From: Octopus sinensis
Taxonomy: Eukaryota
NCBI RefSeq assembly: GCF_006345805.1
Contig: NW_021831899.1
Span: forward strand, 1 to 43,050
Length of the DNA: 43,050 bases
Reading direction: 5' to 3'
In this document: piece by piece, positions 6,371 through 41,329 of the stretch
Layout of the letters: each line of letters opens with the position of its first letter
Numbering within the stretch: position 1 is the stretch's first letter
The notes under the pieces: generated by a model
Database searches by the model: none
Told to the model about the DNA's origin: nothing
Seen by the model: only the letters and a program-made list of their open reading frames with translations
Translations under genes and position numbers: made by a program

Positions 6371-6440
6371 AAGATGTTGAAAATGTCCCATGAAAACTAA
6401 GATGTAGAAAAACCTTATTGGCATCTGCAGACAACATTAT

Positions 6441-6674
6441 CTATTTCTTTATTACCCACAAGGGGCTCAACACAGAAGGGACAAACAAGGACAGACATAG
6501 GTATTAAGTCGATTACATCGACCCCAGTGCGTAACTGGTACTTAATTTATCGACCTCGAAAGGATGAAAGGCAAAGTTGACCTTGGCGGAATTTGAACTC
6601 ACAACGTAACGGCAGACGAAATACCGCTAAGCATTTCGCCCGGCGTGCTAATGTTTCTGCCAGCTCGCCGCCTT
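6441..6674 (-). mobile_element. SINE family B
   Basis: Reverse strand reads aaggcggcgagctggcag...gagttcaaattcc...gcctttcatcctttcgaggtcgataaattaagtacc...gccccttgtgggtaataaagaaa. Confidence 0.88.
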
Positions 6675-6901
6675 CCATACAGCAGTATGGGATGCTAGAT
6701 GGATGGACTGGTTAAACAACTGGCAGTTTAAACAACTGCAGACAATATTACCACCATTTTATCAGACACCAAAGACATAGAGGTGATTGGCACTTCTCTA
6801 AGGGAAGACAAGGCAGTAACAGGGACAAAAATCAACCAAGAAATGTCTGTGAGCCAGCAGCATGGCACCTGGAGAGGCAGGTTCAAGCCATGCAGCAGTA
6901 T

Positions 6902-7132
6902 TTAATTCTTTATTGCTCACAAGGGGCTAAACATAGAGGGGACAAATGACAAACAAAAGGACTAAGTCGATTACATTGACCCCAGTGCATAACTGGTACC
7001 TATTTAATCGACCCCAAAAGGATGAAAGGCAAAGTTGACCTTGGCGAAATTTGAACTCAGAACGTAGTGACAGATGAAATACCACTAAGCATTTTGCCCG
7101 GCGTTCTAATGATTCTGCCAGCTCGCCGCCTT
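6902..7132 (-). mobile_element. SINE family B with decayed 14-bp TSD
   Basis: Same family; TSD ccatgcagcagtat (6888-6901) / ccatacggcagtat (7133-7146). Confidence 0.88.
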
Positions 7133-7820
7133 CCATACGGCAGTATGGGATGCTAGATGGATGGACTGGTTAAACAACTGGCAGTATGGTTTGGTCGAGT
7201 AACCTAAGTGAGAAGAACTGAAACAAGGTGATAAGCAAGGTGGCTAGCCTCACCTGCGAATGAACTGAGAGAAAGCTGTCCCTAAAGGTCGGGCAGAAAT
7301 GGTAAACACTTGCATTGCCTCCTCATTCATTATCATCTGACCTTCATGCCTTGCACTGGTTCAAATGTGACTGGACTGGGGATCCTGCTTCTCCTCCTTC
7401 TTGCCTTAGATTGGCTGTGACTGAACAGACCTGTGATCAGATGTGCTCGTGAGCACTCCACCCTTCTTTCAGGTGTTGTCTATTTAAACCTGCATTATCC
7501 AACTTCTCTCTCTCTCTCTCATCACTTTCTCTCTCCCACTGTCTTTTTAAGGATCGAGGGGAGGGGTATAATTTGAGGGGATTTATGCTGCTGTTTCTAG
7601 AATCTTTTTTGCTTGCCCTGGGTTTAATATTAACAACTCCATGCCTGTCATTGCATTGACTAATGTCTTGTCAGTGAAATTTGGTAGCCAGAAATTATGT
7701 AGAAGATGTACACTTCGATGAGACAACTAAAAAGAAAATCCCTTTCACTCAGCTTCTTTCATCATGTTAAACTGTTAATCCCAACACATTTCTTCTCTCT
7801 CCATTTGTTTCCCTCTCATC

Positions 7821-10592: not shown

Positions 10593-11572
10593 CAAGGCCG
10601 TCGCTAAGCCCCTACGATCCCTGCGGTCGCAGGGTGGGGGGTCTCCACGGTTGAGGGGCGCCTTGTTAAGATCAAAGTACGTAGATGAGTCATCTATTTA
10701 CGTTGGTTAAAATTTTGAACAAGAATTAACTGTGTTAACTGAAAATTTCAAGAAATAAAATGGCAATACATTATTCCTGCAAATGTTCTTGTAAAACTAT
10801 CACATTGTCGCAGGAGTGGCTGTGTGGTAAGTAGCTTGCTAACCAACCACATGGTTCCGGGTTCAGTCCCACTGCGTGGAATCTTGGGCAGGTGTCTTCT
10901 GCTATAGCCCCGGACCGACCAATGCCTTGTGAGTGGATTTGGTAGACGGAAACTGAAAGAAGCCTGTCGTATATATATGTATATGTATGTGTTTGTGTGT
11001 CTGTGTTTGTACCCCTAGCATTGCTTGACAACCGATGCTGGTGTGTTTACGTCCCCGTCACTTAGCGGTTCGGCAAAAGAGACCGATAGAATAAGTACTG
11101 GGCTTACAAAGAATAAGTCCCGGGTTCGATTTGCTCGACTAAAGGCGGTGCTCCAGCATGGCCGCAGTCAAATGACTGAAACATGTAAAAGAGTAAAAGA
11201 GTATTGTACTACGAACATGTTATCAGGCTTTTGGGATTGTCTATATCAATTGAACATGAACTTAACTCTCTTGATTATTCTGAACTGATCGATGATTTCG
11301 CGAAGCGAAAAATGCGCCGTGTTTGTCTTTGAAAGTTGCTGCTGGATTATAAAAGTGTTCTTTTATTCATATCTGCAAGTATTTCTAAATAAATTAAAGT
11401 TGTACTTTAAAAGATGTTCTTTGGGATAATGTGGAATATTGAACTTCAGATAGAATAAAGTAAAATATAGCTATGAATGCGTAGATTATGAATCTTGATT
11501 GAAGGGATGGGGGCCTTGAAACAAAAAGTTGCAAGTGGGGGGGGGCGCTCTAAAAGTCACGCGATGGAGCTG
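10593..11572 (+). mobile_element. hAT (Tip100-like) internal-deletion derivative
   Basis: Degenerate TIRs caaggccgtcgc / gcgatggagctg; 8-bp TSD gcatagat (10585-10592) / gcgtagat (11573-11580); 11249-11332 encodes IEHELNSLDYSELIDDFAKRKMRRVCL*, a hATC dimerisation-domain tail. Confidence 0.78.
10810..11202 (+). mobile_element. SINE family A, well-preserved copy nested in the hAT element
   Basis: tggctgtgtgg A-box, ggttcagtccc B-box, CpGs retained, tail gtaaaagagtaaaagag. Confidence 0.9.
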
Positions 11573-13987: not shown

Positions 13988-14220
13988 TATTTCTTTACTA
14001 CCCACAAGGGGCTAAACACAGAGGGGGACAAACAAGGACAGACAAACGGATTAAGTCAATTACATCGACCCCAGTGCGAAACTGGTACTCAATTTATCGA
14101 CCCCGAAAGGATGAAAGGCAAAGTCGACCTCGGCGGAATTTGAACTCAGAATGTAACGACAGACGAAATACCGCTAAGCATTTCGCCTGGCGCGCTAACG
14201 TGTCTGCCAGCTCGCCGCCT
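13988..14220 (-). mobile_element. SINE family B with perfect 18-bp TSD
   Basis: TSD aaagaagatacacttata at 13970-13987 and 14222-14239. Confidence 0.92.
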
Positions 14221-14239
14221 AAAAGAAGATACACTTATA

Positions 14240-14725
14240 ACTGGCACCCCGTCGGTTATGACGGCAAGGGTTAAAGCTGATCAATTCAACGGAACAGCCT
14301 GCTAATGAAGTTAACGTGTAAGTGGCTGAGTACTCCACAGACACGTGTGCCCTTAACATAGTTCTCATGGAGATTCAGCATGGCACAGGATGTGACAAGG
14401 CTGGCCCTTTGAATTACAGGTACGAATCATTTTTGCTAGTTGAGTGGACTGGAGCAACATGAAATAAAGGGTCTTGCTCAAGGACACAACGCAGTGCCAG
14501 CAGGCCTGTCACCAAACTTTAGTGCCTGTGGGTGCCTCAGAATATTCTGGATGGGCACTAATTTTTGTAGACTGCATTTTTTAAATCTGAGGGCACACCA
14601 TTCAATACTGAGTGGGGCAGCACCCTCCAGTGCACCCCATTAGCGACGTGTCTGGCTACCAAGAATCGAACTCACAACTTCACGTTTATGAGCCGAATGC
14701 CCTAACCACTAAGCAATGAGCCTTC
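14240..14725 (-). mobile_element. tRNA-derived SINE family C (CORE-like), interrupted by a MITE
   Basis: Head (minus) tgcttagtggttagggc..gagttcgattc at ~14655-14720; body gcgttgtgtccttgagcaagac.ctttatttca..ttgctccagtccactc, shared with 39601-39928. Confidence 0.75.
14501..14654. mobile_element. Small hAT-like MITE inserted in SINE C
   Basis: Interrupts the collinear SINE; degenerate termini caggcctgtcacc / ttagcgacgtgtctg; TSD only plausible after CpG decay. Confidence 0.45.
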
Positions 14726-14734
14726 ACTCAAGAC

Positions 14735-15235
14735 ATACACACACGCACACACACTCAAGCATACATGTGTACATACCACACATACACACACACACACATG
14801 CACAAGCATATACGTGAACATGCTATGCACACTCATACACACACACAGAAGCATACATGTTAACATGTCATTCACACACACACACATGCACAAGCATACA
14901 CGTGAACATACCACTCACACACACATTTACACACACACAAGCACACGAACATGCCACTTACACACATATACACACATACACAAGCATACACATGAACATG
15001 CCATTTACACACCCCCACACATACGCACACACACAAGCATACATGTGAACATGCCATTAACATGCACACACACGCATACATATGAACATGCCACACACAC
15101 ACAAGCATACACGTGAACATGCCACTCACACACACACAGACAAGCATACACGTGAATATGCCGCTCACACACACACATACACACAAAGACAAGCATACAT
15201 ATGAACAAACCACTCACACACACACACATATATAC
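14735..15235. repeat. Complex CA-rich minisatellite (motif caagcatacaYgtgaacatgcca)
   Basis: Motif recurs at ~14755, 14802, 14891, 14981, 15033, 15101, 15141 and 15190, separated by (CA)n. Confidence 0.85.
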
Positions 15236-15390
15236 AATGGGTTCTCCCCTCAGGTTTCTTCTATCAAATCCACTCCCAAGACTTTGGTCAGCATTACCCT
15301 AAAATAGATGATAGTGGTGCTGAACCTGGAACAACACGATTAGAATTGGGATGTGAACTTCTCAACTATAGAGTCATGTCTGTATTGGGT
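15236..15390 (-). mobile_element. SINE family A, 5' half, degenerate
   Basis: ctatcaaatccactcccaagactttggtcagc is the reverse complement of the family A gccttgtgagtggatttggtag region. Confidence 0.65.
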
Positions 15391-15400
15391 GTCTAAGAAA

Positions 15401-15562
15401 TCATCATCATCATTTAACATTCATTTCTCATGCTGGCATGGGTTAACAGCTTGACAGGAGCTGGCAAAGCCAGGGGTCGCATCACATTCCATTGTCAGTT
15501 TTAACATGGTTTATACAGCTGGATGCTCTTCCTGATGCCACCAACTTTATAGAATGTACTGG
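15401..15562 (-). mobile_element. RTE-tail element, 3' part (left flank of the satellite)
   Basis: Reverse complement of the RTE LINE 3' end (38745-38906) and of 41175-41329: (cat)n-ttaac..catgctggcatgggtt..cagctggatgctcttcct. Confidence 0.85.
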
Positions 15563-18500
15563 GTGCTTTTTACATGGCATCAGCACCAGTACTTTTTATG
15601 TGACACCATCACCAGTGCTTTTTATGTGACACCATCACCAGTGCTTTTTATGTGACACCATCACCAGTGCTTTTTATGTGACACCATCACCAGTGCTTTT
15701 TATGTGGCACCATCACCAGTGTTTTTTATGTGACACCATCACCAGTGCCTTTTATGTCACACCATCACCAGCACTTTTTATGTGGCACTATCACCAGTGC
15801 TTTTTATGTGACACCATCACCAGTGCTTTTTATGTGACACCATCACCAGTGCCTTTTATGTCACACCATCACCAGCACTTTTTATGTGGCACTATCACCA
15901 GTGCTTTTTATGTGACACCATCACCAGTGCTTTTTATGTGACACCATCACCAGTGCTTTTTATGTGACACTAGCACCAATGCTTTTTATGTGACACCAGC
16001 ACCAGTACTTTTTATGTGACACTAGCACCAGTGCTTTTTATGTGGCACCATCACTAATGCTTTTTATGTGGCACCATCACCAGTGCTTTTTATGTGACAC
16101 CGTCACCAGTACTTTTTATGTGACGCTAGCACCAGTGCTTTTTATGTGACACTATCACCAGTGCTTTTTATGTGACACCAGCACCAGTACTTTTTATGTG
16201 ACACTAGCACCAGTGCTTTTCATGTGACACCAGCACTAATGCTTTTTATGTGGCACCATCACCAGTGATTTTTATGTGACACCAGCACCAGTACTTTTTA
16301 TATGACACCGTCACCAGTACTTTTTATGTGACACCAGCACTAATGCTTTTTATGTGGCACCATCACCAGTGCTTTTTATGTGACACCAGCACCAGTGCTT
16401 TTTATGTGGGACCATCACCAGTGTTTTTTATGTGACACCATCACTAATACTTTTTATGTGACACCATCACCAGTGCTTTTTATGTGGCACCATCACCAGT
16501 GCTTTTTATGTGGCACCATCACCAGTGTTTTTTATGTGACACTGTCACCAGTACTTTTTATGTGACAGCACCAGTGCTTTTTATGTCACACCATCACCAG
16601 CACTTTTTATGTGGCACCGTCACCAGTGCTTTTTATGTGACACCATCACCAGTGCTTTTTATGTGACACTAGCACCAATGCTTTTTATGTGACACCAGCA
16701 CCAGTACTTTTTATGTGACATTGCACCAGTGCTTTTTATGTGGCACCATCACTAATGCTTTTTATGTGGCACCATCACCAGTGCTTTTTATGTGACACCG
16801 TCACCAGTACTTTTTATGTGACACTAGCACCAGTGCTTTTTATGTGACACCAGCACTAATGCTTTTTATGTGGCACCATCACCAGTGATTTTTATGTGAC
16901 ACCAGCACCAGTACATTTTATATGACACCGTCACCAGTACTTTTTATGTGACACCAGCACTAATGCTTTTATGTGGCACCATCACCAGTGCTTTTTATGT
17001 GACACAGCACCAGTACTTTTTATGTGACACCGTCACCAGTGCTTTTTATGTGACACCAGCACTAATGCTTTTTATGTGGCACCATCACCAGTGCTTTTTA
17101 TGTGACACCATCACCAGTGCTTTTTATGTGACACTAACACCAATGCTTTTTATGTGACACTAGCACCAGTGCTTTTTATGTGACACTAGCACCAGTGCTT
17201 TTTATGTGACACCAGCACCAGTACTTATTATGTGACACCGTCACCAGTGCTTTTTATGTGACACCAGCACTAATGCTTTTTATGTGGAACCATCACCAGT
17301 CCTTTTTATGTGACACCAGCACCAGTACTTTTTATGTGACACATCACCAGTGCTTTTTATTGACACCAGCACAATGCTTTTTATGTGGAACCATCACTAA
17401 TACTTTTTATGTGACACCATCACAGTGCTTTTTATGTGGCACCATCACCAGTGCTTTTTATGTGGCACCATCACCAGTTTTTTTATGTGACACCGTCACT
17501 AATGCTTTTTATGTGGCACCATCACCAGTGCTTTTTATGTGACACCATCACCAGTGTTTTTTGTGACACCGTCACCAGTGCTTTTTATGTGGCACCATCA
17601 CCAGTGCTTTTTATGTGACACCGTCACTAATGCTTTTTATGTGGCACTATCACCAGTGCTTTCTATGTGGCACCAGCACTAATACTTTTTATGTGGCACC
17701 ATCACTAATGATCTAATGCTTTTTATGTGGGACTATCACCAGTGCTTTTTATGTGACAACATCACCAGTGCTTTTTATGTGACATCATCACCAGTGCATT
17801 TTATGTCACACCATCACTAATGCTTTTTATGTGGCACTATGACCAGTGCTTTTTATGTGACACCATCACCAGTGTTTTTTATGTGACACCAGCACCAGTA
17901 CTTTTTATGTGGCACCATCACCAGTGTTTTTTATGTGACACTATCACCAGTGCTTTTTATGTGACACCATCACTAATGCTTTTTATGTGACACCATCACC
18001 AGTGCTTTTTATGTGACACTATCACCAGTGCTTTCTATGTGGCACCATCACCAGTGTTTTTTATGTGACACCGTCACCAGTGCTTTTTATGTGACACCAT
18101 CACCAGTGCTTTTTATGTGGGACCATCACCAGTGTTTTTTATGTGACACCATCACTAATACTTTTTATGTGGAACCATCACCAGCACTTTTTATGTGGAA
18201 CTATCACCAGTGCTTTTTATGTGACACCATCACCAGTGCTTTTTATGTGACACCATCACCAGTGCTTTTTATGTGGGACCATCACCAGTGTTTTTTATGT
18301 GACACCATCACTAATACTTTTTATGTGACACCATCACCAGTGCTTTTTATGTGGCACCATCACCAGTGCTTTTTATGTGGCACCATGACCAGTGTTTTTT
18401 ATGTGACACCTTCAACAGTGCTTTTTATGTGACACTGTCACCAGTACTTTTTATGTGACAGCACCAGTGCTTTTTATGTGACACCATCACCAGTGCTTTT

Positions 18501-21500
18501 TATGTGACACCATCACCAGTGCTTTTTATGTGACACCATCACCAGTGCTTTTTTTGTGACACCATCACTAATGCTTTTTATGTGACACCAGCACTAATAC
18601 TTTTTATGTGGGACCATCACTAATGCTCTAATGCTTTTTATGTGGCACTATCACCAGTGCTTTTTATGTGACACCATCACCAGTGCTTTTTATGTGACAT
18701 CATCACCAGTGCATTTTATGTGACACTAGCACCAGTGCTTTTTATGTGGCACCATCACCAGTGTTTGTTATGTGACACCATCACCAGTGCTTTTTATGTG
18801 ACACCATCACTAATGCTTTTTATGTGGCACTATCACCAGTGCTTTTTATGTGACACCATCACCAGTGTTTTTTATGTGACACCAGCACTAAAGCTTTTTA
18901 TGTGGCACCATCACCAGTGCTTTTTATGTGACACCAGCACCAGTACTTTTTATGTGACACTAGCACCAGTGCTTTTTATGTGGGACCATCACCAGTGTTT
19001 TTTATGTGACACCATCACCAGTGCTTTTTATGTGACACCATCACTAATGCTTTTTATGTGACACCATCACCAGTGTTTTTTACGTGACACTGTCACCAGT
19101 GCTTTCTATGTGGCACCATCACCAGTGTTTTTTATGTGACACCGTCACCAGTGCTTTTTATGTGACACCATCACCAGTGCTTTTTATGTGACACCATCAC
19201 CAGTGCTTTTTATGTGGCACCATCACCAGTGCTTTTTATGTGGCACCATCACCAGTGTTTTTTACGTGACACCATCACCAGTGCTTTTTATGTCGCACTG
19301 TCACCAGTGCTTTTTATGTGACACTAACACCAATGCTTTTTATGTGACACTAGCACCAGTGCTTTTTATGTGACACTAGCACCAGTGCTTTTTATGTGAC
19401 ACCAGCACCAGTACTTATTATGTGACACCGTCACCAGTGCTTTTTATGTGACACCAGCACTAATGCTTTTCATGTGGAACCATCACCAGTCCTTTTTATG
19501 TGACACCAGCACCAGTACTTTTTATGTGACACCATCACCAGTGCTTTTTATGTGACACCAGCACTAATGCTTTTTATGTGGCACCATCACCAGTGCTTTT
19601 TATGTGACACCAGCACCAGTGCTTTTTATGTGGGACCATCACCAGTGTTTTTTATGTGACACCATCACTAATACTTTTATGTGACACCATCACCAGTGCT
19701 TTTTATGTGGCACCATCACCAGTGCTTTTATGTGGCACCATCACCGGTTTTTTATGTGACACTGTCACCAGTACTTTTATGTGACAGCACCAGTGCTTTT
19801 TATGTCACACCATCACCAGCACTTTTTATGTGGCACCGTCACCAGTGCTTTTTATTGTGAACACCACACCAGTGCTTTTTATGTGACACTAGCACCAATG
19901 CTTTTATGTGACACCAGCACCAGTACTTTTATGTGACATTGCACCAGTGCTTTTTATGTGGCACCATCACTAATGCTTTTTATGTGGCACCATCACCAGT
20001 GCTTTTTATGTGACACCGTCACCAGTACTTTTTATGTGACACTAGCACCAGTGCTTTTTATGTGACACCAGCACTAATGCTTTTTATGTGGCACCATCAC
20101 CAGTGATTTTTATGTGACACCAGCACCAGTACATTTTATATGACACCGTCACCAGTACTTTTTATGTGACACCAGCACTAATGCTTTTTATGTGGCACCA
20201 TCACCAGTGCTTTTTATGTGACACCAGCACCAGTACTTTTTATGTGACACCGTCACCAGTGCTTTTTATGTGACACCAGCACTAATGCTTTTTATGTGGC
20301 ACCATCACCAGTGCTTTTTATGTGACACCATCACCAGTGCTTTTTATGTGACACTAACACCAATGCTTTTTATGTGACACTAGCACCAGTGCTTTTTATG
20401 TGACACTAGCACCAGTGCTTTTTATGTGACACCAGCACCAGTACTTATTATGTGACACCGTCACCAGTGCTTTTTATGTGACACCAGCACTAATGCTTTT
20501 TATGTGGAACCATCACCAGTCCTTTTTATGTGACACCAGCACCAGTACTTTTTATGTGACACCATCACCAGTGCTTTTTATGTGACACCAGCACTAATGC
20601 TTTTTATGTGGAACCATCACTAATACTTTTTATGTGACACCATCACCAGTGCTTTTTATGTGGCACCATCACCAGTGCTTTTTATGTGGCACCATCACCA
20701 GTGTTTTTTATGTGACACCGTCACTAATGCTTTTTATGTGGCACCATCACCAGTGCTTTTTATGTGACACCATCACCAGTGTTTTTTATGTGACACCGTC
20801 ACCAGTGCTTTTTATGTGGCACCATCACCAGTGCTTTTTATGTGACACCGTCACTAATGCTTTTTATGTGGCACCATCACCAGTGCTTTTTATGTGACAA
20901 CACCACCAGTGTTTTTTATGTGACACCATCACTAATGCTTTTTATGTGGCACTATCACCAGTGCTTTCTATGTGGCACCAGCACTAATACTTTTTATGTG
21001 GCACCATCACTAATGATCTAATGCTTTTTATGTGGGACTATCACCAGTGCTTTTTATGTGACAACATCACCAGTGCTTTTTATGTGACATCATCACCAGT
21101 GCATTTTATGTCACACCATCACTAATGCTTTTTATGTGGCACTATGACCAGTGCTTTTTATGTGACACCATCACCAGTGTTTTTTATGTGACACCAGCAC
21201 CAGTACTTTTTATGTGACACTAGCACCAGTGCTTTTTATGTGGCACCATCACCAGTGTTTTTTATGTGACACTATCACCAGTGCTTTTTATGTGACACCA
21301 TCACTAATGCTTTTTATGTGACACCATCACCAGTGCTTTTTATGTGACACTATCACCAGTGCTTTCTATGTGGAACCATCACCAGTGTTTTTTATGTGAC
21401 ACCGTCACCAGTGCTTTTTATGTGACACCAGCACTAATGCTTTTTATGTGGAACTATCACCAGTGCTTTTTATGTGACACCATCACCAGTGCTTTTTATG

Positions 21501-24500
21501 TGACACCATCACCAGTGCTTTTTATGTGGGACCATCACCAGTGTTTTTTATGTGACACCATCACTAATACTTTTTATGTGACACCATCACCAGTGCTTTT
21601 TATGTGGCACCATCACCAGTGCTTTTTATGTGGCACCATGACCAGTGTTTTTATGTGGGACACCTTCACCAGTGCTTTTTATGTGACACTGTCACCAGTA
21701 CTTTTTATGTGACAGCACCAGTGCTTTTTATGTGACACCATCACCAGTGCTTTTTATGTGACACCATCACCAGTGCTTTTTATGTGACACCATCACCAGT
21801 GCTTTTTTTGTGACACCATCACTAATGCTTTTTATGTGACACCAGCACTAATACTTTTTATGTGGGACCATCACTAATGCTCTAATGCTTTTTATGTGGC
21901 ACTATCACCAGTGCTTTTTATGTGACACCATCACCAGTGCTTTTTATGTGACATCATCACCAGTGCATTTTATGTCACACCATCACTAATGCTTTTTATG
22001 TGGCACTATCACCAGTGCTTTTTATGTGACACCATCACCAGTGTTTTTATGTGACACCAGCACTAAAGCTTTTTATGTGGCACCATCACCAGTGCTTTTT
22101 ATGTGACACCAGCACCAGTACTTTTTATGTGACACTAGCACCAGTGCTTTTTATGTGGGACCATCACCAGTGTTTTTTATGTGACACCATCACCAGTGCT
22201 TTTTATGTGACACCATCACTAATGCTTTTTATGTGACACCATCACCAGTGCTTTTTATGTGACACTATCACCAGTGCTTTCTATGTGGCACCATCACCAG
22301 TGTTTTTTATGTGACACCGTCACCAGTGCTTTTTATGTGACACCATCACCAGTGCTTTTTATGTGACACCATCACCAGTGCTTTTTATGTGGCACCATCA
22401 CCAGTGCTTTTTATGTGGCACCATCACCAGTGTTTTTTACGTGACACTGTCACCAGTACTTTTTATGTGACAGCACCAGTGCTTTTTATGTGACACCATC
22501 ACCAGTGTTTTTTATGTGACACCATCACCAGTGCTTTTTATGTCGCACTGTCACCAGTGCTTTTTATGTGACACCAGCACCAGTGATTTTTACGTGACAC
22601 CAGCACCAGTGCCTTTTATGTCACACCATCACCAGCACTTTTTATGTGGCACCGTCACCAGTGCTTTTTATGTGACACCATCACCAGTGCTTTTTATGTG
22701 ACACTAGCACCAATGCTTTTTATGTGACACCAGCACCAGTACTTTTTATGTGACATTGCACCAGTGCTTTTTATGTGGCACCATCACTAATGCTTTTTAT
22801 GTGGCACCATCACCAGTGCTTTTTATGTGACACCGTCACCAGTACTTTTTATGTGACACTAGCACCAGTGCTTTTTATGTGACACCAGCACTAATGCTTT
22901 TTATGTGGGACCATCACCAGTGATTTTTATGTGACACCAGCACCAGTACTTTTTATGTGGGACCATCACCATGTTTTTTTTTTATGTGACACCATCACTA
23001 ATACTTTTTATGTGACACCAATCACCAGTGCTTTTTATGTGGCACATCACCAGTGCTTTTTATGTGGCACCATCACCAGTGCTTTTTATGTGACAACTGT
23101 CACCAGTACTTTTATGTGACGCACCAGTGCTTTTTATGTGACACACCATCACCAGCAGCTTTTTATGTGCACACCGTCACCAGTGCTTTTTATGTGACAC
23201 CATCACCAGTGCTTTTATGTGACACTAGCACCAATGCTTTTTTGTGACCCCAGCACCAGTACTTTTTTGTGACATTGCACCAGTGCTTTTTATGTGGCAC
23301 CATCACTAATGGCTTTTTATGTGGCACCATCACCAGTGCTTTTTATGTGACACCGTCACCAGTACTTTTTATGTGACACTAGCACCAGTGCTTTTTATGT
23401 GACCCCAGCACAATGCTTTTTATGTGGCACCATCACCAGTGATTTTTATGTGACACCAGCACCAGTACATTTTATATGACACCGTCACCAGTACTTTTTA
23501 TGTGACACCAGCCACTAATGCTTTTTATGTGGCACCATCACCAGTGCTTTTTATGTGACACCAGCACTGCAACCAGTACTTTTTATGTGACACCGTCACC
23601 AGTGCTTTTATGTGACACCGCACTAATGCTTTTTATGTGGCACCATCACCAGTGCTTTTTATGTGACACCATCCACCAGTGCTTTTTATGTGACCTACCC
23701 CAATGCTTTTTATGTGACACTATCACCAGTGCTTTTTATGTGACACTAGCACCAGTGCTTTTTATGTGACAACACAGCACCAGTACTGTATTATGGACAA
23801 CCGTCACCAGTGGCTTTTTATGTGACACCACACCAATGCTTTTATGTGGAACATCCACCAGTCCTTTTTTTATGTGACACCAGCACCAATACTTTTTATG
23901 TGTGCACATCCATCACCAGTGCTTTTTATGTGACACCAGCACTAATGCTTTTTAGTGGAACCATCACTAATACTTTTTATGTGACACCATCACACAGTGC
24001 TTTTTTAGTGCAACCATCACATAGTGCTTTTTATGTGGCACCATCACCAGTGTGTTTTTATGTGGACAACCGTCACTAATGCTTTTTATTGTGGCACCAT
24101 CACCAGTGCTTTTATGTGACACCATCACCAGTGTTTTTTATGTGACACCGTCACCAGTGCTTTTTATTGTGGCACCATCACCAATGCTTTTTATGTGACA
24201 CCGTCACTAATGCTTTTTATGTGGCAACACCATCACCAGTGCTTTTTATGTGACACCACACCAGTGTTTTTATGTGACACCATCACTAATGCTTTTATGT
24301 GGCACTATCACCAGTGCTTTCTATGTGGCACCAGCACCGGTGTTTTTATGTGACACCAGCACTAATGCTTTTTATGTGGCACCATCACCAGTGCTTTTTA
24401 TGTGACACCAGCACCAGTACTTTTTATGTGACACTAGCACCAGTGCTTTTTATGTGGAACCATCACCAGTGTTTTTTATGTGGCACCATCACTAATGCTT

Positions 24501-26413
24501 TTTATGTGGCACTATCGCCAGTGCTTTTTATGTGACACCATCATCAGTGCTTTTTATGTCACACCATCACTAATGCTTTTTATGTGACACCATCACCAGT
24601 GCTTTTTATGTGACGCTATCACCAGTGCTTTCTATGTGGCATTATCACCAGTATTTTTTATGTGACACCGTCACCAGTGCTTTTTATGTGACACCAGCAC
24701 TAATGCTTTTTATGTGGAACCATCACCAGTGCTTTTTATGTGACACCATCACCAGTGCTTTTTATGTGACACCATCACCAGTGCTTTTTATGTGACACCA
24801 TCACCAGTGCTTTTTATGTGACACCATCACCAGTGCTTTTTATGTGACACCATCGCCAGTGCTTTTTATGTCACACCATCACTAATGCTTTTTATGTGAC
24901 ACCAGCACTAATACTTTTTATGTGGCACCATCACTAATGCTCTAATGCTTGTTATGTGGCACTATCACCAGTGCTTTTTATGTGACATCATCACCAGTGC
25001 ATTTTGTGTCACACCATCACTAATGCTTTTTATGTGGCACTATCACCAGTGCTTTTTATGTGACACCATCAGCAGTGTTTTTTATGTGACACCAGCACTA
25101 ATGCTTTTTACGTGGCACCATCACCAGTGCTTTTTATGTGACACCAGCACCAGTACTTTTTATGTGACACTAGCACCAGTGCTTTTTATGTGGCACCATC
25201 ACCAGTGTTTGTTATGTGACACCATCACCAGTGCTTTTTATGTGACACCATCACTAATGCTTTTTATGTGACACCATCACCAGTGCTTTTTATGTGACAC
25301 TATCACCAGTGCTTTCTATGTGGCACCATCACCAGTGTTTTTATGTGACACCGTCACCAGTGCTTTTTATGTGACACCAGCACTAATGCTTTTTATGTGG
25401 AACCATCACCAGTGCTTTTTATGTGACACCATCACCAGTGCTTTTTATGTGACACCATCACCAGTGCTTTTTATGTGACACTATCACCAGTGCTTTCTAT
25501 GTGGCACCATCACCAGTGTTTTTATGTGACACCGTCACCAGTGCTTTTTATGTGACACCAGCACTAATGCTTTTTATGTGGAACCATCACCAGTGCTTTT
25601 TATGTGACACCATCACCAGTGCTTTTTATGTGGAACCATCACCAGTGCTTTTTATGTGACACCATCACCAGTGCTTTTTATGTGACACCGTCACCAGTGC
25701 TTTTTATGTGACACCAGCACTAATGCTTTTTATGTGGAACCATCACCAGTGCTTTTTATGTGACACCGTCACCAGTGCTTTTTATGTGACACCGTCACCA
25801 GTGCTTTTTATGTGGAACCATCACCAGTGCTTTTTATGTGACACCATCACCAGTGCTTTTTATGTGGCACCATCACTAATGCTTTTTATGTGACACCAGC
25901 ACTAATGCTTTTTATGTGGAACCATCACCAGTACTTTTTATGTGGCACCATCACCAGTGCTTTTTATGTGACACCGTCACCAGTGCTTTTTATGTGGAAC
26001 CATCACCAGTGCTTTTTATGTGACACCATCACCAGTGCTTTTTATGTGGCACCATCACCAGTGTTTTTTATGTGACACCATCACCAGTGCTTTTTATGTG
26101 ACACCATCACCAGTGCTTTTTATGTGGCACCATCACTAATGCTTTTTATGTGACACCAGCACTAATGCTTTTTATGTGGCACCGTCACTAATGCTTTTTA
26201 TGTGCACTATCACCAGTGCTTTTTATGTGACACCATCACCAGTGCTTTTTATGTGACACCATCACCAGTGCTTTTTATGTGGCACCATCACGAATGCTTT
26301 TTATGTGCCACTATCACCAGTGCTTTTTATGTGACACCATCACCGGTGTTTTTTATGTGACACCGTCACCAGTGCTTTTTATGTGACACCTGCACTAATG
26401 CTTTTTATGTGAC
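15563..26413 (+). repeat. 26-bp satellite array, ~415 monomers, consensus gtgctttttatgtgacaccatcacca
   Basis: The 26-nt period is visible throughout; three monomers give the 26-aa pseudo-repeat in the ORF track. Length/26 is about 417. Confidence 0.98.
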
Positions 26414-26447
26414 TCCAGGGTCACCAGGTACTTTGCATGACGAAATC
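26411..26447 (-). mobile_element. RTE-tail element, continuation (right flank of the satellite)
   Basis: gggtcaccaggtactttgcatgacgaaatc matches the reverse complement of 41115-41144 (gggtcaccaagtaacttgcaagacaaagat). Confidence 0.75.
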
Positions 26448-27064
26448 GCACTACTGAGAGGGTGACTTTATACCAATTGAGAAACTTAAGGTAAAGAATG
26501 GATAGCTAAGTGTGTCTTGAGCAAATGATTGAATGACTGAATAATCATCACTGAAACTGACTGAGGTCCATTTATTTATTTATTTGCTTATTTATTTATC
26601 TATGTATTAATGTTTGATCTGAGATTTAAGATCTGAGTCAGTTGAGTTCAATAGTTCTTGAAACACTCATAAATTTTGTCTTCACCTGGCTCATTTCACT
26701 ATTTCTATGACAACCTGCTTCCATTCCATTGAAATGTTTTGCTTCTGCTAATAAACCATTCTTCTATTTATCATTCCTGTGTTTCCTTTCCTGGTGTACT
26801 GTTCGGAAAAGTATCATCAATCCTGCTTCTAAAACGGTAACCGTTCTCTATCATCCAGTTACAAATCATACATTTTTCACCAATTCCTGGAACCATAATT
26901 TGGTCTTTCCCTTAAATACAAAACTGTCTTTTGTCTGAAGGCGAAAAAATAAATAAATGTAGTTAGCTATTTTATTCCCTCCCATCATCATCCTCTCTCT
27001 CTATTTCTCTTTCTCTCTCTCTCTTTGTCTCTCCCTCTCTCATTTGAATGAGTCACCTATCAGA

Positions 27065-27787: not shown

Positions 27788-28790
27788 CCCTATAGCATTC
27801 AAACTGGCCACATGAGGCCCGTTCTACCTGTTTAACTAGATCCAACCTCTCACATCTACCCTACAATGTCATTCTAAAAATAAGCAATCACACCATTGGA
27901 ATCTCGAAGCTATGAGATAATGCATGATTAATTCAAAACAATGTGAATAAATAAGCATTACATTTGACAGAGCAATCTGAATGCTAAAGGCTTAAAACAG
28001 CCATATCTGGTCCATTCTACTTGTTTTATGTTCAATGTAGCCAGATCCAATCTTTCACACCTACCCAACAATGTCATTCTAAAACTAAACAATCACATCA
28101 GTGAAATCTCAAAGCTATGAGATAATGCATGATTGATTCAAAACAATATGAATAAATAAGCATTATATTTGGCAGTGATCTGAATGATAAGGGACTAAAC
28201 ATATAAATATATCTCTTTAGAGTTTAAACCAGACATATCCAGCCCAAATATTCTATCTGTTCTATGTTCAAAACAGCTAAATCTGGCCTCTCGTACCTAT
28301 CCTACAATGTCATTCTAAAAATAAACAATCACCTCATTGAAATCTCAGAGCCACAAGATAATGTATGATTAATTCAAAGCAATGTGAATAAATAAACTTT
28401 GCATTTGACAGAGTAATCTGAATGCTAAAGGGTTAAATGAGTCAGATCTGGCCTGTTGCACCTACCCTACAATGCCCTTGTAAAAATAAGCAATCATGTC
28501 ATTGAAATCTTGGAGCTATGAGATAGTGGATGATTAACTCAAAACAATGTAGATAAATAATCATTACATTTGGCAGAATAATCTAAACCAGTCATGTGAC
28601 CCAAGTATTCTACCTGTTTTACGTTCAAATTGGCCAGATCCAGCCTCTCACACCTACCCTACAATGCCATTCTAAAAACAAGTAATCACACCGCTGGAAT
28701 CTCGAAGCTATGAGATAATACATGATTGATTCAAAAGAATGTAAATAAATGAGCATTACTTTTGACAGAGTGATCTGAATGCTTAAAGGG
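27788..28790 (+). mobile_element. Cluster of five head-to-tail piggyBac-like MITE copies (~200 bp each)
   Basis: TTAA|ccctatagcattc (27784-27800); right ends gaatgctaaagg(g/c)|TTAA at 27991, 28432 and 28790, degenerate end at 28193; shared body cacctaccctacaatgtcattctaaaaataaacaatc..gctatgagataatgcatgattaattcaaaac. Confidence 0.82.
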
Positions 28791-31692: not shown

Positions 31693-31718
31693 ATATTATT
31701 TACCAATGAATGCTCATT

Positions 31719-32284
31719 GTGAGATAATGTACGCTTAATGGATATGTGGGTATTTTGTAAATATTTCTGACCAGGTCCTGCCTTTCACACGTACTGTACA
31801 ATGTCACTATAAAAATAAATAATCATATCATTGAGATCTGTAGCCTGTGAGATAATGTACGCTTAATTAATGGATATGTAGGTATTTTGTAAATATTTCT
31901 GACCAGGTCCTGCCTTTCACACGTACTGTACAATGTCACTATAAAAATAAATAATCATATCATTGAGATCTGTAGCCTGTGAGATAATGTACGCTTAATT
32001 AATGGATATGTAGGTATTTTGTAAATATTTCTGACCAGGTCCTGCTTTTCACACATACTGTACAATGTCACTATAAAAATAAACAATCATATCATTGAGG
32101 TCTCCAGCCTGTGAGATAATGTACACTTAATTAATGGAGATGTAGGTATTTTGTAAATATTCCTGACCAGGTCCTGCCTTTCACACGTACTGTACAGTGT
32201 CACTATAAAAATAAACAATCATATCATTGAGATCTGTAGCTTGTGAGAACGGATGCTTAATTTCCTGGGTATGTGGGTATTTTA
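31719..32284 (+). repeat. 132-bp tandem repeat, ~4.3 copies
   Basis: Marker atgtcactat at 31801, 31933, 32065 and (gtgtcactat) 32197, a period of exactly 132. Confidence 0.95.
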
Positions 32285-33935: not shown

Positions 33936-34095
33936 TATATATGATAGGCTTCTTTCAGTTTCCATCTACCAAATCCACTCACAAGGTTGCCCGAGGCTAT
34001 AGTAGAAGGCACTTACCCAAGTGCCATGCAGTGGGACTGAACCCAGAACCATGTGGTTGGGTAGCAAGCTTCTTACTACACAGCCACACCTGCAC
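33385..34095 (-). mobile_element. SINE family A with AT-rich insertion in its internal microsatellite
   Basis: Tail at 33385-33430, body to ~33600, 5' half 33945-34095; 33620-33790 insert related to 241-290. Confidence 0.82.
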
Positions 34096-35023: not shown

Positions 35024-35328
35024 GTAAGGACATCTGCTGGCAATACCCAGCAATGGACTGCATGAAAGCTGTGATAAAAAAATGCGATAGATATAAAGGA
35101 CAATGTTTTGGAACATGTGAAGAAATACTAAATAGATAAGTAGAACCAAGAATTAGCATAAAAAAACCATTATTGTTGTCAAAAGCAATGTGTTTCATGC
35201 AAACAGAGAAGGCAAAAAATACATTAATTTACCCTGGAATTACCAAGTGTACTTATGGTATCAGATGACCAAACAGATGCTGGAATTGGTAAACACCATG
35301 CGCATTTGTAAGCTTCGGCAAAGTTTTT

Positions 35329-38283
35329 CATCCAGGAAGTAAGGTGGAGAGGAGGTTCTGCTAGGCTCCTCACAGGCCAGGAACACAGGTACAAGATTTT
35401 CTGGGCAGGAACACTGACTGACGGGTCGGGGGCGTGGGTATACTTCTTGCGGAGAAATGGGTAGGTAAGGTAATCGAGGTAGTCAGAGTAAGTGACAGAG
35501 TAATTAAAATTAGATTAGTTCTTCACCATAGACAGCTACATCATCATCTCGGCATATGCCCCTCAACCGGGGCTACCGGAAGGACAAAAAGACCAATCTA
35601 TGACACCCCTATTGCGGACTACCTCATTGACAAATGACAGTGACCTTCTCTTTGTGGCAGGTGATTTCAATGGACATGTTGGACGACATGTCGGGGCTTC
35701 CATGGCGTCCATGGAGGCTACGGTTTTGGCTCTCGAAATGAGGAAGGAACCAGGCTGCTGGAGTTCTGCGATGCAAATGACCTTATGGTCTGCAATACCC
35801 ACTTCAGGAAACCCACCTCTCACCTAGTCACCTACCGTTCTGCTTGCAGACACACCCAGCCAGATTGACTACATCCTTGCCAGGAAAAGGGAAAGAGGGC
35901 TGATTATAAATGCCAAAACCTTCCCAGTGAAGAATGTACTCCCCAACATAGATTAGTAGTTAGCGACTTCAGGATCAGAGCTAAATGGTTGCCCAGAAGA
36001 AGACCAGCTTGGAGGAGAAGGGTCTGGAAGCTTAAAGATCCTGCAAATGGACAGAGATTTAGAGACATACTACTCGAAGCCTCTGACGAAATAGAAGGGG
36101 ATATAGCTTCACTTAATGTGGGAAGACAACTGGAGATTCCTACGGGACAATCTGCTGACAATCTGCTGACAGCCACTGACCAGATCTGTGGATGGAGCAG
36201 CAAAGTACCATCTCGACCCAGAGTAACATGGTGGTGGAACACTGTGGTTGACAGGGCTATTAGACAAAAGAGACAGGCTTGGAAGGACTGGAAGACGTGG
36301 TAGCAGGGAATTGTATCAGACAGCCAAAAGGGAAGCTAGGAGACAGGTTTATTTAGCCAGAGGGGAAGCGGATAAGAAAAATTTGCCAATGTTCTGAGCC
36401 GTGAGGATGAAAGACTTGAGGTATTCGTGTTGCAAGACAGTGTGTGAGAGAGAATCGGATGTGGTAGGAGAGAAGTGTGTTCGCATGGATGATGGTTCAC
36501 TTGCGCTAAATGAGGATGCAAAGAGAGGTTTGGAGATGCCACTATGAAAGGTTGCTGAATAAGAAAATGAATGGATAAAGAGAGTCTGCCGAATGTTGAC
36601 CCAACAGAGGAACCATCTATCCGAGTTGATAGTTCCGTGGTAGCTAAGGCAATTAGAAGCATGAAGACAGGGAAAGCCCCAGGCCCATCAGGAATTACTG
36701 GCAGAGATGCTCAAAATATCTGGCAGTGTCGGCTATAACCTAGTCACCCGTATAGTGTCAACCAGTGATACACGAAGGAGTCATCCCAATGACTGGTGTA
36801 GCAGCATACTAGTCAACTGCTACAAAGGTAAAGGTGATGCCCTAGATACAAATAATTACAGAGGTATCAAGCTGGTGGATCAGGTAATGAAGGTTACGGA
36901 GAGGGTCATAGCCCAACTAATTAGAGAGAGAGTTAGTTTAGATGAGATGCAGTTTGGGTTTGTCCCAGGGAAAAGCACCACTGATGCTATATTCATGGTA
37001 AGGCAGCTGCAGGAGAAATACCTAGCCAAAGATAAGCCCTGTACTTGGCTTTCGTTGACATGGAGAAAGCCTTGATAGGGTCCCCCGTTCCCTCATCTGG
37101 TGGTCATGAGGAAACTAGGGATAGATGAATGGCTGGTGAGGGCTGTGCAAGCCATGTACAGAGATGCCGTAAGTAAGGTTTAGAGTTGGCAGCATGTCAC
37201 ACAAGAATTCAAGGTAGAGGTTGGGGTCCACCAGGTTCAGTACTCAGCCCCCTCCTATTTATCATAGTCCTCCAGGCAATTGTGGAGGAATTCAAGACAG
37301 GTTGCCCCTGGGAGCTCCTCTATGCTGACGACCTCGCTCTAATCGCTGAGTCACTATCAGAACTGGAGGAGAAGTTCCAGGTGTGGAAGGAGGGTTTAGA
37401 ATCGAGGGGCCTTAGAGTCAACCTAGCTAAAACCAAAGTACTAATAAGTAGAAAGTTAGAAAATCCACAAATATCCTCAGGAAGATGGCCCTGCTCTCGA
37501 TCTGTAGAAAAGGTGTAGTAGAAACTCTATAAGATGTACCCAGTGTAAGCCATGGACACACATAGAGGTGCAGCAATGTCAAAGGTAGGCTAACTGGGAA
37601 GATAGTTTTTGTATGTGGCAGATGCTCTGGAGCATTGACCTCCGAAAATCTGCAGAAACCAACTTCCTCACTTTCCACTTCCGGGGGAAAAACTAGAAGT
37701 AGTTGATAGCTTCCGCTATCTAGGTGACCAAGTCAGTAGTGGGGGCGGGTGCGCCTGAAAGTGTAACTGCTAGAATAAGATAGCCTGGGCAAAGTTTAGG
37801 GAGCTCTTACCTCTGCTGGTGACTAAAGGCCTCTCGCTCAGAGTAAAAGGCAGACTGCATGATGCATGTGTACGAACAGCTATGCTACATGGCAGTGAAA
37901 CATGGGCCGTGACTGCTGAGGACATGCGTAAGCTTGTGAGGAACGAAGCCAGTATGCTCCGATGGATGTGTAATGTCAGTGTACTTACTCGACAGAGCGT
38001 TAGTACCTTGAGAGAAATGTTGTACCTAAGAAGCATCAGTTGTTGTGTGTGCAAGAGAGACGATTGCGCTGGTATGGTCATGTGGCGAAATGGATGAAGA
38101 TAGGTGTGTGAGAAAGTGCCAATCCCTAGCAGTTGAGGGAACCTGTGGAAGAGGTAGACCCAGGAAAACCTGGGACGAAGTGTGAAGCAGCACGACCTTC
38201 GGACGTTAGGTCTCACCATGGAAATGACTAGAGACCGAGACCTATGGAAGTATGCTGTGCGTGAGAAGACCCGGCAAGACTAG
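35329..38283 (+). pseudogene. RTE ORF (AP endonuclease + reverse transcriptase), broken by many small indels
   Basis: ORF-track fragments 35434-35637, 35600-35827, 35989-36303, 36707-37075, 37186-37518 and 37819-38097 are collinear parts of one protein; terminal TAG at 38281-38283. Confidence 0.95.
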
Positions 38284-38464
38284 AACCATAATCCATGGCC
38301 CCTACCTGGGACGTAGTCAGTCCACCTGTGCATACCTTCCTTCTTGTGACACTTGTGAAGACCTGTTGAGGCAAGTGAGAATCGAATCGAATCGATCAAT
38401 CAAATCAAATCGACCAAATCAAAATAGATGAACATCAATGGAATTTTATCCTTGTGGTTACCAG

Positions 38465-38745
38465 TGCCGGTGGCACATAAGAAAACCATCCGAACGTGAT
38501 CGTAGCCAGTACCGCAAACGACTGGCCTCCGTGCTGAGGGCACGTAACAACACACATCCGAGCGTGGCCGTCCGCCAGCCCCCGTCTGGCACCTGTGTCG
38601 GTGACACATAAGAAAACACCATCCGAGCGTGGCCGTCAGCCATCCTCGTCTGGCACCTGTGTCGGTGGCACATAAAAAAACACCATCCAAGCGTGGCCGT
38701 CAGCCACCTCGTCTGGCACCTGTGTCGGTGGCACATAAAATCACC
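38465..38745 (+). repeat. ~64-bp tandem repeat in the RTE 3'UTR
   Basis: ccRagcgtggccgtc at 38558, 38623 and 38687; each unit carries gtcggtggcacataaaaaacacc; a more diverged unit starts at ~38465. Confidence 0.92.
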
Positions 38746-39074
38746 CACTACACTCTCGGAGTGGTTGGCGTTAGGAAGGGCATCCAGCTGTAGAAACACT
38801 GCCAGATCTGACTGGCCTGGTGCAGCCTTCGGGCTTGCCAGACCCCAGTTGAACCGTCCAACCCATGCTAGCATGGAAAGCGGACGTTAAACGATGATGA
38901 TGATGAATGGTAAAGAAAATGTAATTAAAATGACGCTATATTCGGAAGAATAATTGCTAAGAGTCACTAAAATTCTACAGTGGAACATAGAAAAATTTCT
39001 GAGTAGCTGATTTATTTAAAAAAAAAAAAACTATTTTGTTTATTTTAAGCATTTTGTGAATTTAAAGGAATTCA

Positions 39075-39235: not shown

Positions 39236-39269
39236 CTCTCCCCACCCTCCAGCACCCAGCACCACACCA

Positions 39270-41112: not shown

Positions 41113-41329
41113 GGATCTTTGTCTTGCAAGTTACTTGGTGACCCAGTCAGTGCAGGTGCCACTTAAAAAGCATCCAGTCCACACGGTAAAGTGGTTGACA
41201 TTTGGAAGGGCATCCAGCTGTAAAAATCCTGCCAAAACAGTTTCAGAATCTGGTGCAGAAGTATGTCAAACCATCCCACCCATGCCATCATGGAAGGTAG
41301 ACATTAAACATGATGAAAATGATAATGAT
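41113..41329 (+). mobile_element. RTE-tail element, unexpanded copy with a single satellite monomer
   Basis: ggtgccacttaaaaagcatccagt (41155-41178) is one antisense monomer; the tail ggaagggcatccagctgt..catggaagg.agacattaaacatgatga matches the RTE 3' end. Confidence 0.85.

What the first reader, a model, noticed from the sequence alone, without database searches (positions are those of the whole stretch)
15401..26447. A 10.8-kb satellite was born inside a single retroelement copy, and the unexpanded ancestor is in the same window
The left flank (15401-15562) is the reverse complement of the RTE 3' tail. The right flank (26411-26447) resumes the same element. The intact ~215-bp copy at 41113-41329 aligns collinearly with both flanks and contains one monomer (antisense atgctttttaagtggcacctgcact) bracketed by actgg microhomology. 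One ~26-bp segment therefore expanded about 415-fold in place. TE-derived satellites are known in general, but here both junctions and the pre-expansion state are visible.
Basis: partly seen in the sequence, partly recalled or inferred. Interest (0 to 1): 0.85.

Follow-up and report, generated by a model that had tools for sequence, protein, structure and literature searches.

The report
Retroelement tail repeat grown into satellite
A 10.9-kb run of about 417 copies of a 26-base unit sits inside one old, truncated copy of an octopus RTE-like retroelement, at the spot where this element family normally carries 2-5 tandem repeats; it is a clean example of a known way that satellite DNA arises, not a new kind of event.

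Summary
TRF finds one array at 15563-26417, with a 26-bp period and 417 monomers. A profile built only from outside copies of the element tail matches 15402-15564 end to end (E = 6e-24) and stops at the first monomer. The right flank resumes the element for about 27-45 bp (22/27 identities; 0 of 2000 shuffles score as high).

The interpretation needs three corrections.

- **The site was already repetitive.** In nine other copies of this RTE-like 3'UTR that keep the region (window 38463-38744, Octopus vulgaris loci, one ENA contig), the same position holds 3-5 tandem units. Eight have 61-67-bp units whose first ~26 bp are the homologue of the monomer. One has three short units spaced 25 and 21 bp.
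- **The 41113-41329 copy is not the ancestor.** It is a diverged paralogue, 66% identical to the array-bearing copy in the tail, and no closer than other family members. The two do share a subfamily-specific segment distal to the repeat.
- **Growth was stepwise.** A ~3.2-kb block of about 124 monomers occurs three times at 95-99.5% identity, while mean monomer identity is 85%.

Expansion of short tandem repeats inside a retroelement 3'UTR is already documented, for example Ogre elements in Lathyrus. This is a new member of a known kind. Whether the repeat occurs elsewhere in the genome could not be tested.

The parts
15401..15562 (-). 3'-terminal 162 bp of a 5'-truncated RTE-like LINE copy, read antisense on the + strand. 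It includes the terminal (GAT)n simple repeat and the conserved core TACAGCTGGATGCTCTTCC.
   Evidence: A profile of eight outside tail copies matches it at E = 6.4e-24, full length, and ends at 15564. blastn gives 74% over 167 bp to L083 3119-3279, E = 8e-20.
15563..26427 (-). Tandem array of 417 monomers of about 26 bp. The + strand consensus is GTGCTTTTTATGTGACACCATCACCA. The last unit, 26398-26427, is partial and merges into the flank.
   Evidence: TRF; segmentation. There are 153 distinct monomer sequences and mean pairwise identity is 0.849.
16112..19293 (.). Higher-order block, copy 1 (about 3.2 kb, about 124 monomers). It holds 34-bp marker monomers at 17682 and 18597.
   Evidence: Self-alignments at offsets of 3176-3305 bp, 96-99.3% identity. 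Marker monomers.
19336..22468 (.). Higher-order block, copy 2. It holds 34-bp marker monomers at 20987 and 21851.
   Evidence: Monomer-lag identity peaks at 124-128 monomers.
22601..25491 (.). Rearranged, partial third copy of the block. It holds a 34-bp marker monomer at 24911.
   Evidence: Alignments at offsets of about 6035-6554 bp to copy 1 and about 2815-3336 bp to copy 2, 96.6-99.2% identity. Lag peak at 252 monomers.
26418..26461 (-). Resumption of the element: the 3'UTR segment distal to the repeat (GGGTCACCAGGTACTTTGCATGACGAAATC...TGAGAGG). This is the likely point of 5' truncation.
   Evidence: 22/27 identities to the 41113 copy; 0 of 2000 shuffles score as high. Gapped extension. 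No element homology is detectable beyond this point.
41113..41329 (+). Diverged paralogue from the same subfamily, carrying one repeat unit (41148-41173) flanked by CCAGT/ACTGG. It models the layout before expansion but is not the ancestor.
   Evidence: Profile hit at 41316-41189, E = 2.3e-22. 66% identical to the array-bearing tail.
35312..38923 (+). Degraded, near-full-length RTE-like LINE. APE+RT reading-frame remnants span 35312-38280 and the 3'UTR spans 38281-38923, ending in (ATG)n.
   Evidence: RVT_1 hits; frame map. The 935-aa read-through matches ~1050-aa APE+RT proteins at E = 1e-240, 40-44% identity. tblastn.
38463..38744 (+). The family's own tandem repeat in that LINE's 3'UTR: four units of about 62-66 bp plus a terminal partial unit. 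Each starts (antisense) GTG(A/T)TTTT..ATGTGCCACC, the homologue of the 26-bp monomer.
   Evidence: TRF reports 38539-38740, period 64, 3.2 copies. Sequence read. The tail profile ends at 38743.

Best explanation
An RTE-like LINE of an Octopus-type genome carries a repeat-prone module in its 3'UTR, about 160 bp upstream of its 3' end. Each unit of the module begins GTGCTTTTTAYGTGCCACC.

An old copy, truncated at its 5' end to about 220 bp, inserted in antisense orientation at 15401 to about 26461. It belonged to a subfamily whose unit is short, about 26 bp. The 41113-41329 copy belongs to the same subfamily.

After insertion, the short unit multiplied in place. The likely routes are replication slippage and unequal exchange between neighbouring units. 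The monomers then diversified to about 85% mutual identity.

Later the array grew by duplication of large pieces. A ~3.2-kb block is now present about three times, and many smaller duplications of 0.1-1 kb are visible.

Shown: the anatomy, the homology of both flanks and of the monomer to the element, tandem units at the same site in other copies, and the block structure. Inferred: the molecular mechanism, the order of events and the number of units in the progenitor. No function is implied; the array is most simply a neutral by-product.
For: - The left flank is the element tail and ends exactly where the family's repeat begins.
- The right flank resumes the segment distal to the repeat.
- Nine other copies that retain the site carry 3-5 tandem units there. 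These are window 38463-38744; L082 at 4377 and 6192; L083 at 3165, 3936, 11711, 14873 and 16708; and L084.
- L083 14920, 14945 and 14966 carry three short units spaced 25 and 21 bp.
- In the 85 kb of octopus DNA examined, the unit-head motif occurs only inside these tails. It is absent from 81 invertebrate-host metagenome contigs that share the tail core.
- Edge monomers differ from the array consensus, and the last full monomer looks ancestral. The first monomer is 81% identical to the array consensus and keeps a TTAC variant. The last full monomer keeps CACCTGCACTA and is 85% identical to the unit of the 41113 copy, against an array mean of 74%.
- Blocks are 95-99.5% identical to each other, while the flank is 27-34% diverged from its family. 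This places the last growth steps long after insertion.
- The array-bearing copy and the 41113 copy share the segment GGGTCACCArGTAnyTTGCAwGAC, which the other subfamily lacks.
Against: - The right-flank match is short: 27 bp ungapped and about 45 bp with gaps.
- No target-site duplication was found.
- Only about 42 kb of O. vulgaris DNA and a few short contigs could be sampled. I could not ask whether the same 26-bp repeat forms arrays elsewhere with other flanks.
- The size of the array depends on an assembly I cannot check.
- The RT was not placed phylogenetically, so "RTE" rests on architecture alone.
Confidence: 0.8

Rival explanations
1. The progenitor had exactly one 26-bp unit, as the 41113-41329 copy does. 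The first duplication came from slippage between the flanking ACTGG microhomologies, and that copy is the ancestral state.
For: The 41113 copy holds one unit bracketed by ACTGG. The left junction of the array also reads ACTGG|GTGC. Both copies share the subfamily-specific distal segment.
Against: The ACTGG copies are 31 bp apart, so slippage between them predicts a 31-bp period. An ACTG pair 27 bp apart fits better. The right junction reads ACTCCAGGG. The 41113 copy is 66% identical to the array-bearing tail, no closer than other copies. Nine other copies already have 3-5 units at the site.
Confidence: 0.12
2. The satellite came first. A pre-existing 26-bp satellite was captured into the 3'UTR of the LINE family, and the array here is an original satellite locus that element fragments happen to border.
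For: Vondrak et al. list capture of older satellite fragments by an element as the formal alternative for Ogre-derived satellites (PMC7004042). I could not search whole genomes for the monomer.
Against: Both flanks are collinear pieces of one element copy in one orientation. The family's units are 61-67 bp, and only their first ~26 bp match the monomer. The last full monomer is closer than the array average to the unit of the 41113 copy. No monomer was found outside element tails in the DNA available.
Confidence: 0.04
3. The array length or block structure is partly an assembly artefact, with a repeat mis-expanded or collapsed during long-read assembly. A real but smaller or larger tandem repeat would then sit in the element.
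For: Arrays of short monomers are hard to assemble. The near-identical 3.2-kb blocks could in principle be duplicated by mis-assembly.
Against: The blocks differ by 0.5-5% and by indels (offsets of 3176-3305 bp), with paired marker monomers at different spacings (915 versus 864 bp). That looks like evolved copies, not a duplicated consensus. Both junctions are clean.
Confidence: 0.1

Closest known systems
Satellites derived from short tandem repeats in the 3'UTR of Ogre LTR-retrotransposons (Lathyrus sativus; Vondrak et al. 2020, PMC7004042; Macas et al. 2009)
   Same: In both, a hypervariable tandem-repeat region lies downstream of the coding part of a retroelement. Dispersed copies carry short arrays at a fixed position. 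Occasional copies expand into arrays of many kilobases with variable higher-order periodicity.
   Different: The host element here is a non-LTR (RTE-like) LINE in a cephalopod, not a Ty3/gypsy element in a plant. Only one expanded locus is known. The expanded unit is only the first ~26 bp of the usual 61-67-bp unit. Neither association with centromeres nor abundance is known.
Tetris foldback transposon and the TIR-220 satellite of Drosophila virilis (Dias et al. 2014, PMC4079207)
   Same: Internal tandem repeats of a mobile element supply the monomers of an emerging satellite, and element-array junctions can still be seen (abstract and title).
   Different: Tetris is a DNA transposon and its repeats lie in the terminal inverted repeats. 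The monomers are 220 bp and the satellite is spread across the genome.
Satellite-like arrays carried by Helentron/MITE elements in bivalve molluscs (reviews PMC12628747 and PMC10048060)
   Same: Both are molluscan genomes in which tandem repeats nested in mobile elements seed or spread satellite DNA.
   Different: Those elements are rolling-circle or DNA transposons and they disperse many short arrays. Here a single retroelement fragment carries one long array.
Repeat expansion within composite retroelements such as human SVA (my own knowledge, not tested here)
   Same: An element-internal tandem repeat varies in copy number between insertions and can expand after insertion.
   Different: SVA expansions involve tens of units, not about 417 units and 10.9 kb.
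Higher-order repeat (HOR) satellites such as primate alpha satellite (my own knowledge)
   Same: Large blocks are far more alike (95-99.5%) than neighbouring monomers (~85%).
   Different: There are only about three irregular block copies, with many other nested duplications. This is segmental duplication within an array, not a regular, homogenised HOR.

Membership tests
Satellite or tandem array derived from a mobile element by expansion of element-internal tandem repeats | The monomer is homologous to a sequence inside the element. | tested here: met
   The monomer aligns with the head of the 3'UTR unit, GTGCTTTTTAYGTGCCACCGGCAC. Array monomers hit the 3'UTR profile at the unit position in the expected orientation, though weakly.
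Satellite or tandem array derived from a mobile element by expansion of element-internal tandem repeats | Short arrays occur at the same position in dispersed copies of the element. | tested here: met
   Nine other copies have 3-5 units starting right after ...AGTGTAGTGG. One copy (41113) has a single unit.
Satellite or tandem array derived from a mobile element by expansion of element-internal tandem repeats | The expanded array is flanked on both sides by collinear sequence of the same element. | tested here: met
   Left flank E = 6.4e-24. Right flank 22/27 identities with 0 of 2000 shuffles as high. The right flank is short.
Satellite or tandem array derived from a mobile element by expansion of element-internal tandem repeats | Polarity: relatives have the element with short arrays but lack the long array. 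| not testable with these tools
   No cephalopod genome can be searched by DNA here. Only about 42 kb of O. vulgaris was reachable, through protein look-ups.
Satellite DNA in the strict sense (abundant, with many or very long arrays) | High genomic abundance, or several long arrays. | not testable with these tools
   There were no hits for the monomer in the viral collection or in the 86 fetched loci. A protein search with an ORF from the array found nothing. None of these collections holds whole octopus genomes for DNA search.
RTE clade of non-LTR retrotransposons | A single ORF with an N-terminal apurinic-type endonuclease and a reverse transcriptase, in a compact element of about 3.2-3.6 kb. 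| tested here: met
   Frame remnants at 35312-38280 show endonuclease motifs and RVT_1. Full-length matches are ~1050-aa PF03372+PF00078 proteins on contigs of about 3.2-4.4 kb. The 5' end of the element is not defined.
RTE clade of non-LTR retrotransposons | The 3' end is a short simple repeat rather than poly(A). | tested here: met
   (ATG)n, read as (CAT)n or (GAT)n on the antisense strand, ends the tail in more than ten copies. Petrosino et al. note that microsatellites are common in RTE elements (PMC9115989).
RTE clade of non-LTR retrotransposons | The RT domain falls within the RTE clade in a phylogeny. | not tested
   No named reference set of LINE clades was available, and database hits carry no clade names.
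V-SINE domain, 'Vhc' conserved subdomain | Match to the 37-39-bp Vhc consensus. | tested here: inconclusive
   The tail core resembles a stretch of the zebrafish DANA SINE printed in bioRxiv 10.1101/493155. It recurs in 81 metagenome contigs. The published Vhc consensus appears only in a figure.
Regular higher-order-repeat satellite | Many homogenised copies of a multi-monomer unit. | tested here: not met
   There are only about three irregular copies of a ~3.2-kb block, plus assorted other duplications.

The most novel reading that the evidence does not exclude
The repeat module in the 3'UTR of this very abundant octopus RTE-like tail could be a recurrent seedbed for satellites. Independent copies across octopod genomes would then have expanded into long arrays with different unit lengths. 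The 26-bp repeat could be one of the so far undescribed major satellites of octopus chromosomes, with its birth site preserved here.
Probability: 0.12. Interest if true: 0.6.

Novelty: new member of a known kind. Interest (0 to 1): 0.35.

Why it matters
The locus shows a satellite-type array at an early, still readable stage. Both junctions survive, the parent element can be identified, and the same site can be seen with 1, 3-5 and about 417 units in different copies.

Full-text searches of the held literature found no description of cephalopod satellite DNA. LINEs and SINEs make up about a quarter of the O. vulgaris genome (PMC13282606). A repeat-prone module in a common element tail could therefore matter for genome structure and for assembly quality in octopods.

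The process itself is already established in plants, insects and bivalves, so this does not change the general picture.

Tried and rejected
1. Extending the element beyond 26461. Smith-Waterman against four 3'UTRs gave only weak, sub-significant collinear matches. An nhmmer profile of the proximal 3'UTR found nothing right of the array. tblastn found no RT-coding sequence there. The copy is therefore truncated within the 3'UTR.
2. Hairpin-driven slippage. A four-monomer single strand folds no better than shuffles (z = -0.47). Rejected.
3. Finding the satellite elsewhere. The dimer pattern had 0 hits in viral contigs. A 139-aa ORF from the array gave no hits among 5.8 billion proteins. The monomer is absent from all 86 fetched loci. 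These results are uninformative, because no octopus genome can be searched by DNA here.
4. The metagenome scan with the tail core returned 81 contigs that share only the ~35-55-bp core, not the family.
5. Rfam: no family matched at gathering score in the window.
6. The L083 14873 copy as the source of the right flank: only a weak match, score 27.
7. Full-text searches for octopus or cephalopod satellite DNA found nothing relevant.
Full report
**1. What is there**

Tandem Repeats Finder reports a single array at 15563-26417 with a period of 26 bp, 416.8 copies and 85% matches. My own segmentation gives 417 monomers. Of these, 351 are exactly 26 bp, and there are 153 distinct sequences. Mean identity to the consensus GTGCTTTTTATGTGACACCATCACCA is 91.6%, and mean pairwise identity is 84.9%.

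The + strand left of the array begins ATCATCATCATCATTTAAC... and runs to ...GAATGTACTGG at 15562. The array ends with a partial unit that merges into GGGTCACCAGGTACTTTGCATGACGAAATC.

**2. What the flanks are**

The window holds a degraded, near-full-length non-LTR element on the + strand at 35312-38923.

- Three-frame translation shows endonuclease and reverse-transcriptase remnants.
- A 935-aa read-through matches ~1050-aa endonuclease+RT proteins, encoded on contigs of about 3.2-4.4 kb, at E = 1e-240 and 40-44% identity.
- Its C-terminal 176 aa match proteins named from Octopus vulgaris and O. bimaculoides at 71-96% identity over the aligned parts. The window is therefore octopod.
- The single ORF, the compact size and the (ATG)n terminus fit the RTE clade, which is documented in octopus (PMC9115989; PMC13282606). 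I did not place the RT in a tree, so "RTE-like" is the safe label.

Protein look-ups gave me two 20-kb pieces of the O. vulgaris assembly (L082, L083) and an ENA contig, L084, whose 3'UTR is 95% identical to the window element's and which is 92% identical to it over its 1.4 kb. A profile built only from the eight tail copies in those loci matches three places in the window:

| Window position | Strand | E-value | Note |
|---|---|---|---|
| 15402-15564 | + | 6.4e-24 | profile positions 2-163 of 163; stops at the first monomer |
| 38902-38743 | - | 5e-56 | tail of the near-full-length element |

The right flank (26424-26450) matches the segment just distal to the single unit of the 41113-41329 copy at 22/27 identities. 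None of 2000 shuffles and 1 of 3000 random genomic 90-mers scored as high. With gaps the match reaches a shared TGAGAGG near 26461.

**3. The site is a tandem-repeat site across the whole family**

This is the main correction. I anchored every copy on the conserved core TACAGCTGGATGCCCTTCC and read onward. Nine other copies that retain the region carry tandem units beginning directly after ...AGTGTAGTGG, which is the same boundary as the array.

| Copy | Units at the site |
|---|---|
| window 38463-38744 | five unit heads; TRF: 64 bp x 3.2 |
| L084 | 63 bp x 4.4 |
| L083 11711 | four heads; TRF: 61-63 bp |
| L083 16708 | 66 bp x 2.3, with 4-5 heads |
| L083 3936 | three heads |
| L083 3165 | four heads |
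| L082 4377 | 67 bp x 2.4 |
| L082 6192 | five heads |
| L083 14873 (a second RTE-like subfamily) | three short units; heads at 14920, 14945 and 14966, spaced 25 and 21 bp |

TRF values are, head counts are, and the short-unit copy is confirmed.

Each unit starts GTGCTTTTTAYGTGCCACCGGCAC, which is the homologue of the 26-bp monomer. The rest of the 61-67-bp unit is absent from the array. In the 85 kb of octopus DNA available, this head motif occurs only inside such tails. It is absent from 81 invertebrate-host metagenome contigs that share the tail core.

**4. The 41113-41329 copy is a paralogue, not the ancestor**

Over the aligned tail it is 66% identical to the array-bearing copy. The other family copies are 65-74% identical to the array-bearing copy. 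Both are old, decayed insertions.

The two copies do share a derived distal segment, GGGTCACCArGTAnyTTGCAwGAC. The main subfamily instead reads GGTAACCACAAGGATAAAATTCC. They therefore belong to one subfamily, and the 41113 copy is a fair model of the layout before expansion.

The ACTGG microhomology is real in that copy, but the two copies of it are 31 bp apart. An ACTG pair 27 bp apart fits the period better. The motif is not intact at the right junction of the array.

**5. How the array grew**

Neighbouring monomers are no more alike than distant ones (0.846 at lag 1 against 0.849 overall). Identity peaks at lags of 124-128 and 252 monomers.

Self-alignment shows that 16112-19293 recurs at 19336-22468 with 96-99.3% identity over 0.4-1 kb stretches. 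It recurs in rearranged form at about 22601-25491. There are also many shorter duplications at offsets of 104 bp to about 1 kb.

Rare 34-bp monomers mark the blocks: 17682 and 18597, then 20987 and 21851, then 24911.

The first monomer is the most divergent from the array consensus (81%). The last full monomer is 85% identical to the unit of the 41113 copy, against an array mean of 74%. Array edges usually escape homogenisation, so this pattern is expected.

The flank is 27-34% diverged from its family, while the blocks differ by 0.5-5%. The last growth steps therefore came long after insertion.

**6. Mechanism**

The best-supported account has three steps.

1. An old 5'-truncated RTE-like copy, carrying one or a few short units, inserted here.
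2. The units multiplied in place by slippage and unequal exchange.
3. The array then enlarged through duplications of several kilobases.

The anatomy and the homologies are shown by the data. The mechanism and the order of events are inferred. A single-stranded four-monomer stretch folds no better than shuffled sequence, so nothing points to a structure-driven process. Nothing indicates a function.

**7. Comparison with what is known**

Reviews state that satellites can arise from untranslated regions of LINEs and through expansion of short arrays inside mobile elements (PMC12628747).

The closest worked example is the Ogre 3'UTR repeats of Lathyrus sativus. There, nine of eleven satellites exist mostly as short arrays at a fixed position in dispersed elements and only occasionally expand (PMC7004042). 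The present case has the same logic in a different element class and phylum.

I found no paper on cephalopod satellite DNA in the held library. This is a new member of a known kind.

**8. Limits**

- No cephalopod genome could be searched by DNA, so I cannot say whether this monomer forms other arrays or whether the locus varies between individuals.
- The right-flank match is short.
- No target-site duplication was found.
- The RTE assignment rests on architecture.
- Array length depends on the assembly.

Noticed in passing
window 15510-15545 (+), 38774-38808 (-), 41200-41226 (-); loci L001-L081: The tail core GTTTCTACAGCTGGATGCCCTTCCTAACGCCAACCA is deeply conserved. The 19-mer TACAGCTGGATGCYCTTCC occurs in 81 JGI metagenome contigs. 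A majority of these look like invertebrate DNA and place the 19-mer inside a longer shared block. A few look like chance bacterial hits. A similar stretch is in the zebrafish DANA SINE printed in bioRxiv 10.1101/493155. It may be the 'Vhc' subdomain of V-SINEs (PMC4758252), here inside a LINE 3'UTR.
   Followed up: partly
L082 16635-17923 (O. vulgaris OX597824.1); single copies at window 6427-6676, 6903-7134, 13988-14222: A 184-bp segment of another abundant octopus SINE-like repeat (...GTTCTGAGTTCAAATTCCGCCGAGGTCGACTTTGCCTTTCATCC...) forms a 7-copy tandem array at 93% identity in O. vulgaris. This is a second case of an element-internal segment in tandem.
   Followed up: partly
window 39264-39383 (+); L082 about 14400-14520 (-): A different element family shares the conserved core and a similar terminal region but has no repeat unit after it.
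   Followed up: no
window 14734-15236: A CA-rich minisatellite with a period of about 47 bp and about 11 copies (69% matches) lies 165 bp left of the element tail. The stretch 15230-15290 between them matches another dispersed repeat, also at 598-640, 10917-10956 and 33955-33985.
   Followed up: no
window 31718-32248 and 28281-28584: Two further tandem repeats share a motif (...ACAATG(C/T)CA(C/T)T(A/C)TAAAAATAAACAATCA...): 132 bp x 4.1 at 94%, and 165 bp x 1.8. This may be another element-derived short array.
   Followed up: no
homologues of the window 35312-38280 product: Many of the ~1050-aa endonuclease+RT homologues carry a precomputed PHD-finger hit (PF00628). The window copy has a Cys-rich stretch after the RT at 37480-37660.
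   Followed up: no
L083 14764-15898 (-): A second RTE-like subfamily is about 73% identical in the ORF to the window element. Its 3'UTR has short 21-25-bp units instead of 61-67-bp units.
   Followed up: partly
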